Virus record (IMG/VR): IMGVR_UViG_3300046692_000091
Location: 124,001 to 188,000 of that record
Length of the DNA stretch: 64,000 nucleotides
Reading direction: 5' to 3' (one strand)
This document shows, in pieces, positions 13,702-55,499 of this stretch. The notes beneath the pieces were generated by a model. The model did no database searches. It saw only the letters and a list, made by a program, of their open reading frames with translations, and was not told where the DNA came from. Position 1 is the first letter of the stretch. Each line of letters opens with the position of its first letter. The translations under genes were made by a program, and so were the position numbers.

Positions 13702-13878
13702 ATGAACAGAGGTTTCCGTAGACTGTACTCTAGTTTACATCGAACCGACCGTAAGCGATCTGCACGACATACTGAGCTGGCGCCAAGCCAGCTTATGTCT
13801 GAGATACCCGGTTGGTGGAAATGCACAACAATCAAACCACTGGAAGAACTAGATGCCCCAACTCGAAACGCTGCGTGA
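13702..13878 (+). CDS. Small hypothetical protein
   Basis: SD gaggtg; 58 aa ending NAA. Confidence 0.5.
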   Translation: MNRGFRRLYSSLHRTDRKRSARHTELAPSQLMSEIPGWWKCTTIKPLEELDAPTRNAA

Positions 13879-14590
13879 AATGTGTGAGATAATGAAGAGC
13901 ATGGCGCAGCCGGTGCGGCACCATCCGGTCGTCATTGCTTCTCCACCACTATTATTCATGCGCAATGATGATGGCACATATACCAGAAACGAACGTGGTC
14001 ACTTGGTGATGGACCAGCTAGCTACTTACAAGCAAAATAGACCTGTAGCAAAAGACTATTCGTTAGAGTCGGTACTGAAGGAAGATCAGACTTTTACCGA
14101 TTACATGAAATGTTTGACGGATATGCCTTTTGAACCAACACCTCGTCGTCAGATAAAAATGATGTGGAGACGCTCTCCATGGGAATCTGCTAAATGGCAA
14201 GGATTCCAGTGGGGTGGACGGACTAATGCTTCCGCTACAGAACACGCATTGCGTCGTGCGATTCAGAAGACCATCCCTAAAGCTCCAGTGTACACGCCAC
14301 AGATGAAACGTGATTGGAGCTGGCGCGGTAAAAGCCGTGTTATCTCTAATCTTTGCTATGAACTGTTCGGTACGGGTATCTATTCAGGCCGGTGCGGAGC
14401 TCAAGTTATTCAACAGGATATTATCAATGATCGGTTTCGGATTGACCCTGTACGACTATCCACCCAACTTACCAGTGCGTACGCCCAGCTGCCTCTCGAC
14501 GGACGCTTTACATTGCCTTATGAAACGCTTGAGAGCTTTTACGTCACAAAGCAAAGTGGTGTTTATACTTCCACGGGCCATTGGGATTGA
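13853..14590 (+). CDS. Hypothetical protein
   Basis: 245 aa ORF. Confidence 0.75.
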   Translation: MPQLETLREMCEIMKSMAQPVRHHPVVIASPPLLFMRNDDGTYTRNERGHLVMDQLATYKQNRPVAKDYSLESVLKEDQTFTDYMKCLTDMPFEPTPRRQIKMMWRRSPWESAKWQGFQWGGRTNASATEHALRRAIQKTIPKAPVYTPQMKRDWSWRGKSRVISNLCYELFGTGIYSGRCGAQVIQQDIINDRFRIDPVRLSTQLTSAYAQLPLDGRFTLPYETLESFYVTKQSGVYTSTGHWD

Positions 14591-14640
14591 TGAAAGTACT
14601 GGCCGTCCCAATGTAATATCTAACCAAGAGATTTTTAAGC

Positions 14641-15267
14641 ATGTCAGTTCTATCAGACAAAACTATTCGGCGTCTCAGCGAAGAAGCGAAAGTGCCGATG
14701 ATTCAACCTTTCTTTGGTCGTTCAGTAAAGACACTGAACGGAAAGAAAGTGGCAAGCTACGGATTGTCCACGGGCGGGTACGACATCCGAGCAGCGAGAG
14801 AGTTCAAGGTCTTCAAGCCTATCAAATACACCCTCTGGGAACGTTTGAAGTTCCTGTTCACGGGTAAACCAAAACCAGTCAGTCCACTGAGCTATAAAGA
14901 AATCAGTGAAGACATGTTCGATTCGGTTGAAGGTGATTTCGTTGTAGTTCCACCGGGTGGCTTCTTGCTGGCTCGGAGTATGGAATACGTTAACATGCCA
15001 CGGGATGTATTGGCTCTGTGTATCGGTAAATCAACCATCGCTCGTGCGGGTTGGAATTGTCTGTGTACACCAATCGAACCTGAGTGGGATGGATACATCA
15101 CCCTGGAGTTCCAGAACACTACGGATCGTCCTAACATCTTCTATGCTGGTGAAGGTTGCTTGCAATTGGTGTTCATGCGTTTGGATGAAGAACCAGAAAC
15201 TTCCTACCTCGATCGTGGTGGTAAGTACAACAACCAACAAGCTCGTATCGTTTTGCCGCGTGTGTAA
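14641..15267 (+). CDS. dcd: dCTP deaminase
   Basis: SYGLSTGGYDIR, GKSTIARAG, IEPEWDGYITLEF, KYNNQ motifs. Confidence 0.92.
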   Translation: MSVLSDKTIRRLSEEAKVPMIQPFFGRSVKTLNGKKVASYGLSTGGYDIRAAREFKVFKPIKYTLWERLKFLFTGKPKPVSPLSYKEISEDMFDSVEGDFVVVPPGGFLLARSMEYVNMPRDVLALCIGKSTIARAGWNCLCTPIEPEWDGYITLEFQNTTDRPNIFYAGEGCLQLVFMRLDEEPETSYLDRGGKYNNQQARIVLPRV

Positions 15268-15287
15268 AGTGAGCCTTCGGGCTCACT
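15268..15287 (+). terminator. Intrinsic terminator
   Basis: agtgagcc-ttcg-ggctcact plus T tract. Confidence 0.85.
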
Positions 15288-15311
15288 CTTTATTTTCTTT
15301 TTGGAGGTTTC

Positions 15312-15791
15312 ATGGCAGTTATTGTTGTCGATGTTAAAGAAGCATTTGTAATCAATCCGGAACAGTCGTGGGGTAAAGGCGAAGGGTTTATCGAAGCCCT
15401 GCGTGATCATCCTCGGTATAAAGCGATACTGGTGAAGTGCCACCATAAAGAGGTTTCTTTCTATCGTGATATGATCCGTGATTCGGTAGCGAAAGAAGGC
15501 CGTGTCGATCGTATCCTGCAACATTTGGAACGACAAGGAATCGATGTTGTTGTTGTAGAACGTGAACCAAAGTTTAACACAGAACGAATCCGTTATATCG
15601 GCGGTGGTCGTGAATATTTTTCCGGTCAGGCACAGATCGTTAAAGTAGATGACACTATCGATCCTGAGATCGTACAACGTGCACTAGATCATGCTGCTAA
15701 ACAATCGGGTGATGTCACCTACGAATCAATACTACGTCATCTGTTGGATCTTGGTGTATTGCAAGGCACTCTAACTAAAATCGAATACTAG
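15312..15791 (+). CDS. Hypothetical protein
   Basis: SD ggagg; 159 aa. Confidence 0.8.
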   Translation: MAVIVVDVKEAFVINPEQSWGKGEGFIEALRDHPRYKAILVKCHHKEVSFYRDMIRDSVAKEGRVDRILQHLERQGIDVVVVEREPKFNTERIRYIGGGREYFSGQAQIVKVDDTIDPEIVQRALDHAAKQSGDVTYESILRHLLDLGVLQGTLTKIEY

Positions 15792-15800
15792 GAATCTCCA

Positions 15801-16397
15801 ATGGGTTACATTTTCCATAACCGTAAAATTGTTGTAGTCGAAGAACGAACCAGTAATGATTATCGCCATCTTTATAACGATCGCCAAAGTCGTGTGGTAC
15901 TGATCAAGGTTCCTGGAGAACTGCGTGATGTAGAAGATGCTATCCGAGCTATCCTTGATTCCACTAAGGATACCAATGCGGCATTGGATCGTGTTCGTCG
16001 TATCACTGCGATCGAAGGTATCGAAGTTCATATCGTCGCTCCTCGATCGAGTACTGTTACCCAAGGTAAGTCAGGTGATCAAACACATTGGCGCCGTACC
16101 TGGGTGAACCGCGTCTTCCATCTAGTTAATGGTGAGCTGGAGTACCTTGAAGATAGCGATCTGAATTTCATTGGCTGGGAGGATGCCGGTTGTGCTGCTT
16201 TTCTTACGGAAAAGTTTGCCTATAATACCCAACAAGGGGAACATGCTAACTTCGATAATATCGACCGTATGTTGCAGGGCTTTAAAGACCTTGACATTAT
16301 CCGTAACTTCAAGATCTCTGAACTGTCCCTTCCGGATGCAATACAGTTCACTCTGCAGAAAGATGAACCAGAACCATTTGACTACGTGGCACGTTAA
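15801..16397 (+). CDS. Hypothetical protein
   Basis: 198 aa; TAATG-coupled to ligase. Confidence 0.8.
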
Positions 16398-54249: not shown

Positions 54250-54287
54250 TTTATGTTGTTTTCTTTTATTCAAACTTTTTAAACGCC

Positions 54288-54295
54288 TATATTAC
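54288..54295 (+). promoter_or_regulatory. Early promoter TATATTAC
   Basis: Context tttcttttattcaaac shared with promoter at 716. Confidence 0.8.
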
Positions 54296-54329
54296 ATTCT
54301 TGGATTCACTAACTATAGGAAAAGGCCCG

Positions 54330-54713
54330 ATGACTAGTGTAAAGACCGATCGCGAACGCGTAGAAAAACTGTCAATGTTCAGCATAGATCTCACCCAGAA
54401 GATCCGTTCACTAATCGATGTCTTAGGACCATACGCACCTCTGGCACAAGCGTTGTCCGAATACCCTGATGCCTTAATCGTAAAAGCACAAGTAAAATTG
54501 CGTGGCTCAAGTAATAGTCTCTATCAGGTCTCTATCCTAGATAGTGGTCAACTGCAAGAAGTGTTCGTCACCGACAATGACGTATCTCGCTATATTGCAC
54601 TCCGCTTTAACAAAGCGGTATTTGGTACGAGCGACATATTCGATCGTGCCTCAATCTCCGTTGATGGTGTGACTATTGATCCTGAATCTCAGGGTCTAGC
54701 CGACATCGACTGA
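54330..54713 (+). CDS. Hypothetical protein
   Basis: 127 aa after promoter. Confidence 0.75.
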   Translation: MTSVKTDRERVEKLSMFSIDLTQKIRSLIDVLGPYAPLAQALSEYPDALIVKAQVKLRGSSNSLYQVSILDSGQLQEVFVTDNDVSRYIALRFNKAVFGTSDIFDRASISVDGVTIDPESQGLADID

Positions 54714-54718
54714 GAACA

Positions 54719-54736
54719 GTAACCCTTCGGGGTTAC
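54719..54736 (+). terminator. Intrinsic terminator
   Basis: gtaaccc-ttcg-gggttac plus T tract. Confidence 0.85.
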
Positions 54737-54771
54737 ATATTTTTCTTTGTGTGTTTTAAGGAATTTGCAGT

Positions 54772-55206
54772 ATGACAGTTGCACCAGAAATGGTTCCATT
54801 CGTTTATTGCGGTGGTACGTTAGCTGTATTCATCATAGGTACATTACTGTTCTTACTTATCCGCGGCATGATGGATCAGCGTGAGAATGAAAAGCCCGGC
54901 GAAAACAAACGTACTCGTTACATGATGCGTTTCGTTTATGATGCAGTTAACGTTAGGAGAATCGGCTATTACTCTACGAATACGATGAAGCCTTATATAC
55001 AGGCGTATCCAAAGTATGCGGCGGTAATAACTGGTTATCCGGCGGCGAAGTCTGTGTTTGATGACCATGCTAAACTAAGCCTTGGTCAAGTCAAAGAACA
55101 ATTTGCTTATCTGTACCCTACGTGCCGAATCTATCTAATGGAAGAACGCACTTACTTCGGTATTAAATCCTGGTATGACCTAACGAGCGTGGATCTGGTC
55201 CCATGA
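54772..55206 (+). CDS. N-terminally anchored membrane protein
   Basis: TM at approximately residues 9-30. Confidence 0.75.
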   Translation: MTVAPEMVPFVYCGGTLAVFIIGTLLFLLIRGMMDQRENEKPGENKRTRYMMRFVYDAVNVRRIGYYSTNTMKPYIQAYPKYAAVITGYPAAKSVFDDHAKLSLGQVKEQFAYLYPTCRIYLMEERTYFGIKSWYDLTSVDLVP

Positions 55207-55499
55207 GTGAATATGTAATCGAAATCATCCGTGGTCGTGATCACATTTATCTGTCTCGTAAAGAGAGCGGTAAAGCCAATGTCACACCGCAAGAACGCAA
55301 CGCTATTACTTTTGAATCATCAACTGCAGCTAAGCTAGTGATTGATGCATTGATGGAAAAGCCCACCTCAGACATGCGTAAGCTGTTGAAGGTTCAAGAA
55401 GACTGGAATCGTCCAGTCCAACTGTTGGCCCGTAAGCGGTTGGGTAATAGTCACATGACTACCAACGCCCGTATGTATCTATTTAAGGAAGCCGCATAA
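55203..55499 (+). CDS. Hypothetical protein
   Basis: 98 aa, coupled. Confidence 0.75.
   Translation: MSEYVIEIIRGRDHIYLSRKESGKANVTPQERNAITFESSTAAKLVIDALMEKPTSDMRKLLKVQEDWNRPVQLLARKRLGNSHMTTNARMYLFKEAA

What the first reader, a model, noticed from the sequence alone, without database searches (positions are those of the whole stretch)
13702..55499. Strong excess of proteins ending in Ala-Ala (ClpXP degron-like)
Seen: 11 ORFs end in AA: 13878 RNAA, 23637 KEAA, 25461 RRAA, 29814 VEAA, 30157 KEAA, 32916 EEAA, 35338 EEAA, 39305 KEAA, 39703 EKAA, 39975 RLAA, 55499 KEAA. Ala codons vary (gcc/gca/gcg/gct). A rough chance expectation among ~135 ORFs at ~8% Ala is about 1. Known: terminal AA-COOH is the ClpX-recognised end of the ssrA tag. 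Inference: a programmed-turnover regulon for early proteins, possibly linked to the phage SspB. Caveat: most cases overlap the next gene's SD (aaggaagcagcATGA encodes KEAA), but 32916 (followed by a terminator) and 25461 do not.
Basis: partly seen in the sequence, partly recalled or inferred. Interest (0 to 1): 0.65.

Follow-up and report, generated by a model that had tools for sequence, protein, structure and literature searches.

The report
Ala-Ala protein tails at overlapping gene junctions
In this jumbo phage an unusual number of proteins do end in Ala-Ala, but the surplus sits almost entirely where one gene's stop overlaps the next gene's start, so it looks like a quirk of tight gene packing rather than a built-in protein-destruction programme.

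Summary
The window is 124001-188000 of a 314.8-kb nucleus-forming (Psa21/201phi2-1-like) Pseudomonas-type jumbo phage. All 11 Ala-Ala tails are present as written, and all 11 ORFs are real. Genome-wide, 17 of 423 called genes end in AA (2.7 expected from composition), and AA is the top dipeptide outlier. The excess has two layers. Genes whose stop does not overlap the next start carry AA at 2.3%. That matches E. coli K-12 (2.0%) and six related phages (2.5%), so it is ordinary. The real surplus is at stop/start-overlap junctions: 9 of 70 genome-wide, and 8 of 30 against 3 of 89 inside the window. There the tail reads (K/E)-E-A-A from RRGGAR-GCN-GCN-TGA/TAATG. The ribosome-binding site explains K-E but not A-A. 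Spacer preference, RNA structure, paralogy and a combined preference model all failed to explain A-A. Most tails are acidic or polar, unlike potent ClpX tags ([LFYW][LAR]LAA), are poorly conserved, and also occur on RNA polymerase beta and UvsX. The "phage SspB" is real (window 26978-27718), but such homologues are already annotated in this family, and 201phi2-1 has one without any AA excess.

The parts
13702..13878 (+). 58-aa ORF ending RNAA. It overlaps the next gene (start 13853) by 26 nt.
   Evidence: Sequence. Conserved in G001 (88%, same tail), G002, Psa21 and G004. Missed by my caller.
23299..23637 (+). 112-aa ORF ending KEAA, with aaggaagccgcaTGA and an ATGA overlap with the next gene.
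   Evidence: Orthologue tails are KESQ (G001), KAVA (Psa21, D6), KAAA and IAAA (G002, G003, longer proteins).
24997..25461 (+). 154-aa ORF ending RRAA. The TAA stop is part of TAAGGA before an ATG at 25470, and the Ala codons lie outside the RBS.
   Evidence: All relatives end RN[ILV] or FAE, so AA is derived here, with 5 of 6 bases changed against G001.
26978..27718 (+). SspB homologue (246 aa). It has an N-terminal substrate-binding domain, a P/A/K-rich linker, and a conserved C-terminal [L/W]-x-V-I-Q-G-G-K peptide. It does not end in AA (tail GGKA).
   Evidence: Alignment A1. The profile hits only SspB PDB chains at E about 1e-9. It finds E. coli sspB and 201phi2-1 gp347. Pfam SspB matches in orthologues score 24.7-32 bits.
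28432..29814 (+). Bcs1-like AAA+ ATPase (460 aa) ending VEAA. The stop is 1 nt before the next ATG.
   Evidence: Pfam BCS1_N plus AAA. Tails are LEAA (G001), VSAA (G002), LKAA (G004), but LSE (Psa21) and PAV (D6, G003).
29816..30157 (+). 113-aa ORF ending KEAA, with aaggaagctgcaTGA overlapping the PRPP-synthase start.
   Evidence: The identical 15-mer is present in G001, D6, G002 and G003. Psa21 has KEAV.
31102..32916 (+). Nicotinamide phosphoribosyltransferase (604 aa) ending EEAA. It is not coupled to a downstream start.
   Evidence: Pfam NAPRTase. The -EAA tail is kept in G001, G002, L026 and G004 with gcg, gcc and gct codons. Psa21 has FEVA, D6 and G003 have VVEA.
32923..32940 (+). Terminator-like hairpin after NAMPT.
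35081..35338 (+). 85-aa ORF ending EEAA, with gaggaggcagcaTGA and an ATGA overlap.
   Evidence: G001 has EVPA and Psa21 has DVQA.
38829..39305 (+). 158-aa ORF ending KEAA, with an ATGA overlap. First of three consecutive AA-tailed genes.
   Evidence: L026 has EKEAA at 35% protein identity.
39302..39703 (+). 133-aa ORF ending EKAA, with a TAATG overlap.
   Evidence: G001 has DKAT (gca against aca).
39703..39975 (+). 90-aa ORF ending RLAA, with an ATGA overlap. This is the only tail close to the strong ClpX consensus.
   Evidence: G001 has RLAT and G004 has QVAA.
55203..55499 (+). 98-aa ORF ending KEAA, with a TAATG overlap.
   Evidence: Tails are KEAA in G001 and G003, EKAA in G002, EVVA in Psa21.

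Best explanation
The Ala-Ala excess is a composite and is most likely not a proteolysis programme. Layer 1 is a background of about 2-2.5% AA tails. It is shared with related phages and with E. coli and reflects a mild preference for Ala at the last two positions. Layer 2 is a local surplus confined to translationally coupled junctions in the tightly packed operons of window 23-56 kb. There the next gene's ribosome-binding site lies in frame inside the upstream ORF (AAGGAA or GAGGAG, read as K-E or E-E). The 5-8 nt spacer up to the overlapping ATGA or TAATG is read as two small residues, GCN-GCN. About half of these junctions are inherited from ancestors shared with relatives. The rest differ from relatives by one to a few bases. 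The tail is therefore best read as a short C-terminal appendage dictated by gene packing and re-initiation, with Ala-Ala as a lineage-typical filler. Shown: the association with coupling and the baseline equality. Inferred: that the tails are functionally neutral for protein stability. Unexplained: why Ala-Ala in particular.
For: The excess vanishes outside overlap junctions: 8 of 353 (2.3%) here, against 2.0% in E. coli and 2.5% in relatives. Within the window the contrast is 8 of 30 coupled against 3 of 89 uncoupled, odds ratio 10, p = 7e-4. In coupled junctions Ala(-2) and Ala(-1) occur as a unit (odds ratio 62, p = 5e-7) and follow an in-frame RBS: 6 of 9 NRGGAR junctions end in AA. KEAA is the only tetrapeptide tail seen 5 times, on unrelated genes. 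Four to five of the nine junctions are shared with relatives, one as an identical 15-mer. AA tails are poorly conserved overall: 0 of 9 window tails against Psa21, compared with 38% of all orthologue pairs sharing their last two residues. Tails lack the hydrophobic context of potent ClpX tags (PMC10862746). AA also ends RNA polymerase beta (6 of 7 genomes) and a UvsX-like recombinase. Overlap-driven C-terminal codon bias (NNA-UGA) is established in bacteria (PMC7246954).
Against: The RBS explains K-E but not A-A. GCNGC occurs in 0 of 219 intergenic and 1 of 102 near-start spacers. A model combining intergenic spacer preferences with C-terminal residue preferences gives P(AA) of only 0.5-1%. 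There is no RNA-structure signature. 201phi2-1, which infects the same host genus, has 0 of 79 AA at coupled junctions, so no universal ribosomal preference exists. In some families AA persists while -3 and -4 vary and the Ala codons differ (NAMPT, the 322-aa family, the AAA+ protein). AA is retained in 37% of orthologue pairs with diverged -3/-4, against 15% for other dipeptides, which hints at some protein-level constraint. Ala is enriched only at -1 and -2 (1.5x and 1.3x) and is 0.76x at -3. Bacteria in general disfavour hydrophobic residues at -1 (PMC7246954).
Confidence: 0.5

Rival explanations
1. Weak or conditional ClpXP C-degrons. The AA-COOH tails give cytoplasmic phage proteins a low-affinity ClpX signal, possibly boosted or gated by the phage SspB-like adaptor, so that a block of early or middle proteins is turned over.
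For: Terminal Ala-Ala is necessary for ssrA-like recognition and dominated an unbiased screen, in 91% of the top 100 tags (PMC10862746). The two Ala behave as a unit. Ala enrichment is confined to -1 and -2. AA is retained above average when neighbouring residues diverge, with synonymous Ala codon variation in NAMPT. A genuine SspB homologue with a P-x-[L/W]-x-V-[I/V] C-terminal peptide resembling E. coli SspB's PALRVVK lies 2 genes upstream of three AA-tailed genes. Its tail against the ClpX N-domain dimer scored 0.37 against a best control of 0.00 (3 controls; partner pLDDT about 50; verdict 'weak support'; at or below 0.60 the mark was reached by only 5 of 78 solved complexes and by all 4 of the mismatches that passed, out of 180). 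SspB-like and ClpS-like adaptors are already noted in jumbo phages (PMC10299810, PMC7824862).
Against: The enrichment tracks stop/start overlap rather than protein class. Uncoupled genes sit at the E. coli level. The upstream context is polar or acidic, and E. coli itself tolerates 2% AA tails. AA alone on a polar linker was 'entirely defective' (PMC10862746). There is no shared upstream motif for an adaptor to bind. Conservation is poor. 201phi2-1 has SspB without any AA excess. RNA polymerase beta and UvsX also end in AA.
Confidence: 0.2
2. Nothing beyond baseline, shared ancestry and selective noticing. A reader scanning 400 possible dipeptides picked the most salient one. Several tails are inherited together or lie in adjacent genes, so the independent events are few.
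For: Against a 2.5% empirical baseline the genome total is marginal (17 of 423, p about 0.04-0.05), and the window result (p about 1e-3) would not survive correction for 400 dipeptides. Five of the 11 tails lie in two runs of adjacent genes. Four to five coupled junctions are ancestral. The closest relatives have only 2-4 coupled AA junctions each.
Against: G000 against relatives at coupled junctions gives 9 of 70 against 11 of 368, p = 0.0016. The 17 genes are not paralogues. Five unrelated genes share KEAA.
Confidence: 0.2
3. Junction cassette. The roughly 12-15 nt AAGGAAGCNGCNTGA acts as a recurrent boundary sequence (microhomology) through which small accessory genes are swapped or inserted. 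The KEAA tails would then be scars of recombination.
For: The same junction sits on five unrelated genes in variable small-gene arrays. One copy is identical across four genomes whose flanking proteins are only 63-89% identical.
Against: Wobble positions differ between junctions. There is no similarity beyond 12 nt on either side. The flanking genes are mostly syntenic orthologues rather than indel boundaries.
Confidence: 0.1

Closest known systems
ssrA-like ClpX C-terminal degron (C-motif 1; ...YALAA-COOH)
   Same: A free C-terminal Ala-Ala, the element contacted by ClpX and critical in screens (PMC7652416, PMC10862746).
   Different: The upstream residues are Glu, Lys or Arg rather than Leu or aromatic. 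Net charge is 0 to -2. The tails are genome-encoded and tied to overlapping starts. There is no evidence of degradation.
C-terminal codon bias caused by overlapping start codons (NNA-UGA; Weber et al. 2020, PMC7246954)
   Same: The last codons of coupled genes are shaped by the downstream start and RBS. The K-E of KEAA is the in-frame AAGGAA, and GCA supplies the A of ATGA.
   Different: The known effect concerns the third base of the last codon. Here two whole Ala codons co-occur as a unit, and only in this phage lineage.
SspB, the ClpXP adaptor (E. coli, H. influenzae); phage homologues RAY gp039 and 201phi2-1 gp347
   Same: Window 26978-27718 has the SspB substrate-binding domain, a flexible linker and a short conserved C-terminal peptide resembling the ClpX-binding tail.
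   Different: The tail is [L/W]xVIQGGK(A) rather than LRVVK at the very end. The cargo is unknown. The gene lies in a conserved cluster with a Bcs1-like AAA+ ATPase.
Alanine tails added by RqcH in Bacillus
   Same: C-terminal Ala residues acting as a ClpXP signal.
   Different: Those tails are added after translation stalls, whereas these are encoded. Pseudomonas-type hosts use tmRNA.

Membership tests
ssrA-like ClpX C-degron | Free C-terminal Ala-Ala | tested here: met
   All 11 ORFs end in AA before a stop.
ssrA-like ClpX C-degron | Favourable upstream context ([L/F/Y/W]-[L/A/R]-L before AA; neutral or positive, moderately hydrophobic) | tested here: not met
   10 of 11 tails have E, K, R or N at -3 and polar or acidic residues at -4 and -5. 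Only ERLAA (39975) fits. The criterion comes from PMC10862746.
ssrA-like ClpX C-degron | Tail exposed on the folded protein | not tested
   No structures were predicted. The charged tails suggest exposure, but this is inference only.
ssrA-like ClpX C-degron | ClpXP-dependent degradation abolished by AA-to-DD substitution | not testable with these tools
   Needs half-life measurements in wild-type and clpX/clpP mutant hosts.
SspB adaptor family (window 26978-27718) | Homology to the SspB substrate-binding domain | tested here: met
   Profile A1 hits only SspB PDB chains at E about 1e-9 over residues 13-100. E. coli sspB is the sole K-12 chromosome hit. Orthologues pass or approach the Pfam PF04386 cut-off. 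The window protein alone does not reach Pfam.
SspB adaptor family (window 26978-27718) | Flexible linker followed by a C-terminal ClpX-binding peptide (LRVVK type) | tested here: inconclusive
   A variable P/A/K-rich linker and a conserved [L/W]x[V/L][I/L]QGGK are present. D6 has PHLRVIQGGKA against E. coli PALRVVK. Complex prediction with the ClpX N-domain gave 0.37 against a best control of 0.00, 'weak support', partner pLDDT about 50.
SspB adaptor family (window 26978-27718) | Binds a degron-bearing cargo and speeds its ClpXP degradation | not testable with these tools
   No common upstream motif was found in the AA-tailed proteins.
Translationally coupled overlap junction | Stop overlaps or abuts the next start (ATGA, TAATG), with an RBS inside the upstream ORF at working distance | tested here: met
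   8 of the 11 tails have a gap of -4 to +1, with AAGGAA, GAGGAG or GAGAAA 5-8 nt before the ATG. The learned RBS is AGGA(A/G) with 4-7 nt spacing.

The most novel reading that the evidence does not exclude
A nucleus-forming jumbo phage marks a block of its cytoplasmic early or middle proteins with weak, genome-encoded Ala-Ala-COOH degrons. It uses its own SspB-like adaptor, docked on host ClpX through an LRVV-like tail, to time their removal.
Probability: 0.12. Interest if true: 0.75.

Novelty: new variant of a known kind. Interest (0 to 1): 0.3.

Why it matters
If the tails were degrons, this would be a virus-encoded turnover programme run through a host protease with a viral adaptor, which would be a new layer of jumbo-phage gene regulation. 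On the evidence here it matters more as a caution. C-terminal motif statistics in compact genomes must be split by stop/start overlap and compared with an empirical baseline (about 2% AA tails even in E. coli), not with amino-acid composition alone. The unexplained residue is small but could be tested as a translation-coupling question: Ala-Ala occurs as a unit at coupled junctions in one phage lineage and not in 201phi2-1, which infects the same host genus.

Tried and rejected
1. It accounts for K-E but not A-A. GCNGC is absent from 219 intergenic spacers and present in 1 of 102 near-start spacers.
2. NNA constraint of ATGA. GCA is 11% of internal NNA codons and 10.8% of last codons at relatives' ATGA junctions, so Ala at -1 alone is not unusual. 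The anomaly is the pairing with Ala at -2.
3. 'Best compromise' model (intergenic spacer base preferences times C-terminal residue preferences). It gives P(AA) of 0.5-1%, rank 25-58, and is rejected.
4. RNA hairpins sequestering the RBS. There is no MFE difference, only slightly more pairing in the GC-richer spacer (p = 0.02, uncorrected), and no common design.
5. Paralogy. None of the 17 AA genes cluster together.
6. Helix-like E/K/A-rich tails. Ala is enriched only at -1 and -2 and is depleted at -3.
7. Fixed nucleotide motif. Ala wobble bases follow genome usage.
8. Link to possession of SspB. 201phi2-1 has SspB and no excess.
9. The AT-rich NAMPT-carrying phages G006-G008 showed 0 AA tails, but they are poor composition controls.
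10. A genome-contig scan with the ligase, meant to obtain a Pseudomonas host control, returned only a Saprospiraceae MAG. No Pseudomonas proteome control was obtained, so E. coli was used instead.
11. Whole-genome Pfam SspB search of this genome. It missed the real homologue and gave only an 11.5-bit hit elsewhere.
12. Complex prediction of the SspB tail with the ClpX N-domain. It passed the mark only weakly: 0.37 against 0.00, and at or below 0.60 such passes are more often wrong than right unless the guess was likely beforehand.

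
Full report
**Identity of the sequence.** The window is bases 124001-188000 of a single 314,814-bp virus contig. Its closest named relatives are Pseudomonas phages Psa21 and D6, at about 77% nucleotide identity in conserved genes. It shares 167 of 423 predicted proteins with 201phi2-1, including multisubunit RNA polymerase pieces. Psa21 is listed among the nucleus-forming, chimallin-encoding phages (PMC10299810 supplement). The window carries nucleotide- and NAD-metabolism genes (ligase, dCTP deaminase, thymidylate synthase, PRPP synthase, NAMPT) and many small genes of unknown function, nearly all on the + strand.

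**Checking the observation.** No annotation was available, so I built a self-trained gene caller using a 3-periodic Markov model, a learned RBS with spacing, and start-codon weights. It finds 423 genes (91% coding) with RBS AGGA(A/G), and it recovers 72 of 76 annotated + strand stops in a 50-kb Psa21 test region. Ten of the 11 ORFs are called. The eleventh (13702-13878) was missed but is conserved in four relatives, so it is real.

**Size of the excess.** Genome-wide, 17 of 423 called genes end in AA, against 2.7 expected from composition and 3.1 from the internal AA dipeptide frequency (p = 3.5e-9). AA is the strongest outlier of all dipeptides. The window holds 10 of these among 118 genes, and the rest of the genome holds 7 among 305.

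**The right baseline.** Composition is too low a bar:

| Genome set (same pipeline) | AA ends | Rate or expectation |
|---|---|---|
| E. coli K-12, 400 kb | 7 of 357 | 2.0%; Ala at -1 is 1.41x |
| Six related jumbo phages | 7-14 each, 63 of 2418 pooled | 2.6%; about 2.6 expected per genome |
| 201phi2-1 | 4 of 455 | 2.3 expected |
| Three AT-rich unrelated phages | 0 | 0.6-0.8 expected |

A bacteria-wide study reports hydrophobic residues other than Phe as disfavoured at -1 (PMC7246954). Ala enrichment in this clade (1.5x at -1, 1.3x at -2, 0.76x at -3) is therefore a mild lineage trait, but E. coli shows a similar one.

| Class | AA ends | Note |
|---|---|---|
| Overlap junctions (gap -4 to +1), this genome | 9 of 70 | 0.44 expected from composition; p about 1e-5 to 9e-5 against the 2-2.6% baselines |
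| All other genes, this genome | 8 of 353 (2.3%) | p = 0.4-0.7 against the baselines |
| Window, coupled | 8 of 30 | odds ratio 10, p = 7e-4 against window uncoupled |
| Window, uncoupled | 3 of 89 | includes the missed ORF 13702-13878 |
| Outside the window, coupled | 1 of 40 | |
| Relatives, coupled | 11 of 368 (3%) | no extra over their uncoupled rate |
| Relatives, uncoupled | 52 of 2050 (2.5%) | |

So the surplus belongs to this genome's tight operons, and to a lesser degree to those of its nearest kin (G001-G003, 9 of 174).

**Anatomy of the junctions.** The nine coupled tails are KEAA (five times), EEAA, VEAA, EKAA and RLAA. They are encoded as RRGGAR-GCN-GCN followed by TGA within ATGA, or by TAATG/TGATG. 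The purine-rich codons are the next gene's RBS read in frame. Of nine junctions with an in-frame NRGGAR at -4/-3, six end in AA. Ala(-2) and Ala(-1) co-occur far more than independently, at odds ratio 62. KEAA is the only tetrapeptide tail seen five times, and it sits on unrelated proteins.

**Why Ala-Ala? Explanations tested and rejected.**
- It is not a general initiation signal. GCNGC occurs in 0 of 219 intergenic spacers and 1 of 102 near-start spacers.
- The ATGA constraint makes Ala at -1 about 11% likely, and relatives show exactly that. The pairing with Ala at -2 is the anomaly.
- A model multiplying intergenic spacer base preferences by C-terminal residue preferences gives AA only 0.5-1%.
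- Local RNA folding shows no special hairpin.
- Ala wobble bases follow genome usage.
- 201phi2-1, with the same host genus and similar G+C, has 0 of 79, so the host ribosome does not demand it. That phage also never places NRGGAR in frame at -4/-3 of its overlap junctions, so the K-E-x-x layout is itself a lineage habit.

**Evolution of the tails.** The 80 AA tails in seven genomes fall into 47 of 1029 orthologue clusters.
- Some are old. The 113-aa gene keeps the identical aaggaagctgcaTGA in four other genomes. NAMPT keeps -EAA in four relatives with gcg, gcc and gct codons, one of them only 49% identical. The AAA+ protein and the 98-aa and 322-aa families also keep AA while -3 and -4 vary.
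- Many are labile. None of the nine window tails with a Psa21 orthologue is AA there, against 38% last-two identity for all orthologue pairs. Five of eight are lost in the closest relative, often by a single base, as in ACA against GCA.
- Across all pairs with diverged -4/-3, AA is retained in 37%, against 15% for other dipeptides. NS, LK and NK are retained as well or better, and these pairs are not independent.

Overall there is a little protein-level constraint in a few families and none in most.

**Bearing on the degron idea.** In a random C-terminal tag screen in E. coli, Ala-Ala is necessary but not sufficient. The consensus is [L/F/Y/W]-[L/A/R]-L-A-A, strong tags are neutral or positive and moderately hydrophobic, 39% of AA-ending 5-mers were weak, and AA alone was defective (PMC10862746). 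The tails here have strongly hydrophilic -5 to -3 positions and net charge 0 to -2. Only ERLAA (39975) resembles the consensus. Carriers include RNA polymerase beta (RYAA in 6 of 7 genomes), a UvsX-like recombinase, NAMPT and the AAA+ protein, besides small unknown proteins. They share no upstream motif that an adaptor could read.

**The phage SspB.** A whole-genome Pfam search found nothing credible, but orthologues in relatives hit PF04386 at up to 32 bits. A profile of window 26978-27718 plus seven orthologues hits only SspB structures, at E about 1e-9 over the whole substrate-binding domain. It also finds the E. coli sspB gene and 201phi2-1 gp347. The layout is domain, variable linker, then conserved C-terminal peptide: PAGWSVIQGGKA here and PPHLRVIQGGKA in D6, compared with E. 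coli ...RPALRVVK read from the genome. A complex prediction of residues 200-246 with two copies of the ClpX N-domain of P. syringae scored 0.37, with the best of three controls at 0.00. The partner pLDDT was about 50, the runs agreed in at least 50% of contacts, and the verdict was 'weak support'. At or below 0.60 the mark was reached by only 5 of 78 solved complexes and by all 4 of the mismatches that passed, out of 180. [quoted passage not shown] Phage ClpS and ClpP are also known in jumbo phages (PMC7824862). The gene lies in a conserved, translationally coupled cluster: SspB-like, a 237-aa unknown, a Bcs1-like AAA+, a 113-aa unknown, PRPP synthase, NAMPT.

**Verdict.** The most likely reading (0.5) is a packing and re-initiation idiom plus an ordinary background, with no dedicated turnover function. 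Why Ala-Ala in particular remains unexplained. The rivals are weak, possibly adaptor-assisted ClpXP degrons (0.2), chance with ancestry and selective noticing (0.2), and a recombination boundary sequence (0.1).

Noticed in passing
window 49096-49374, 49383-49631, 49935-50168, 50168-50452, 52925-53278, 53286-53621, 59643-59984 (plus genome 118858-119280 and 120622-121080): Eleven genes end in -NS (1.1 expected, p = 2.6e-8). Nine of them are small proteins ending [Y/W/F]-x3-[I/V]-N-S-COOH. They form a weakly similar family (16-35% identity, no pairwise BLAST hits), and Ser is encoded by both TCN and AGY, so this is a protein-level C-terminal motif. Most are followed by TAAGGA, where the stop is part of the next RBS.
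   Followed up: partly
window 26978-32916: A conserved, translationally coupled cluster: SspB homologue, 237-aa unknown, Bcs1-like AAA+ ATPase, 113-aa unknown, PRPP synthase, NAMPT. It is syntenic in Psa21 (gp299-gp304) and D6. Whether the SspB-like tail serves host ClpX or the neighbouring phage AAA+ is open.
   Followed up: partly
L027:12439-13569 and L149 (201phi2-1 252598-252882 region): The SspB homologues of G005 and 201phi2-1 are about 376 aa. The G005 protein carries the tail motif twice: an internal RHWTVIEGGK and a C-terminal EWLTVHKGGEHVA. 201phi2-1 ends EWLQVHEGGLK.
   Followed up: no
genome 30565-30747 (L001), outside the window: A weak Pfam SspB match (11.5 bits, E = 0.04) in a 219-aa ORF. 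It may be noise or a second, very divergent SspB-like gene.
   Followed up: no
window 24997-25461: The RRAA tail differs from the RRNI of the closest relative at 5 of 6 bases, while the 12 bases upstream differ at 1. This is a sharply local replacement.
   Followed up: no
E. coli K-12 372921-373871 (L164 region): A 316-aa E. coli gene ends GEAA, encoded ggagaagcggcaTGA, with an ATGA overlap. This is the same RBS-GCN-GCN-ATGA layout as the phage junctions, so the idiom is not unique to the phage.
   Followed up: no
window 13702-13878: A conserved 58-aa basic protein gene that my caller missed. It overlaps the next gene by 26 nt.
   Followed up: yes
window 1-64000: No tRNA or tmRNA genes in the window.
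   Followed up: yes
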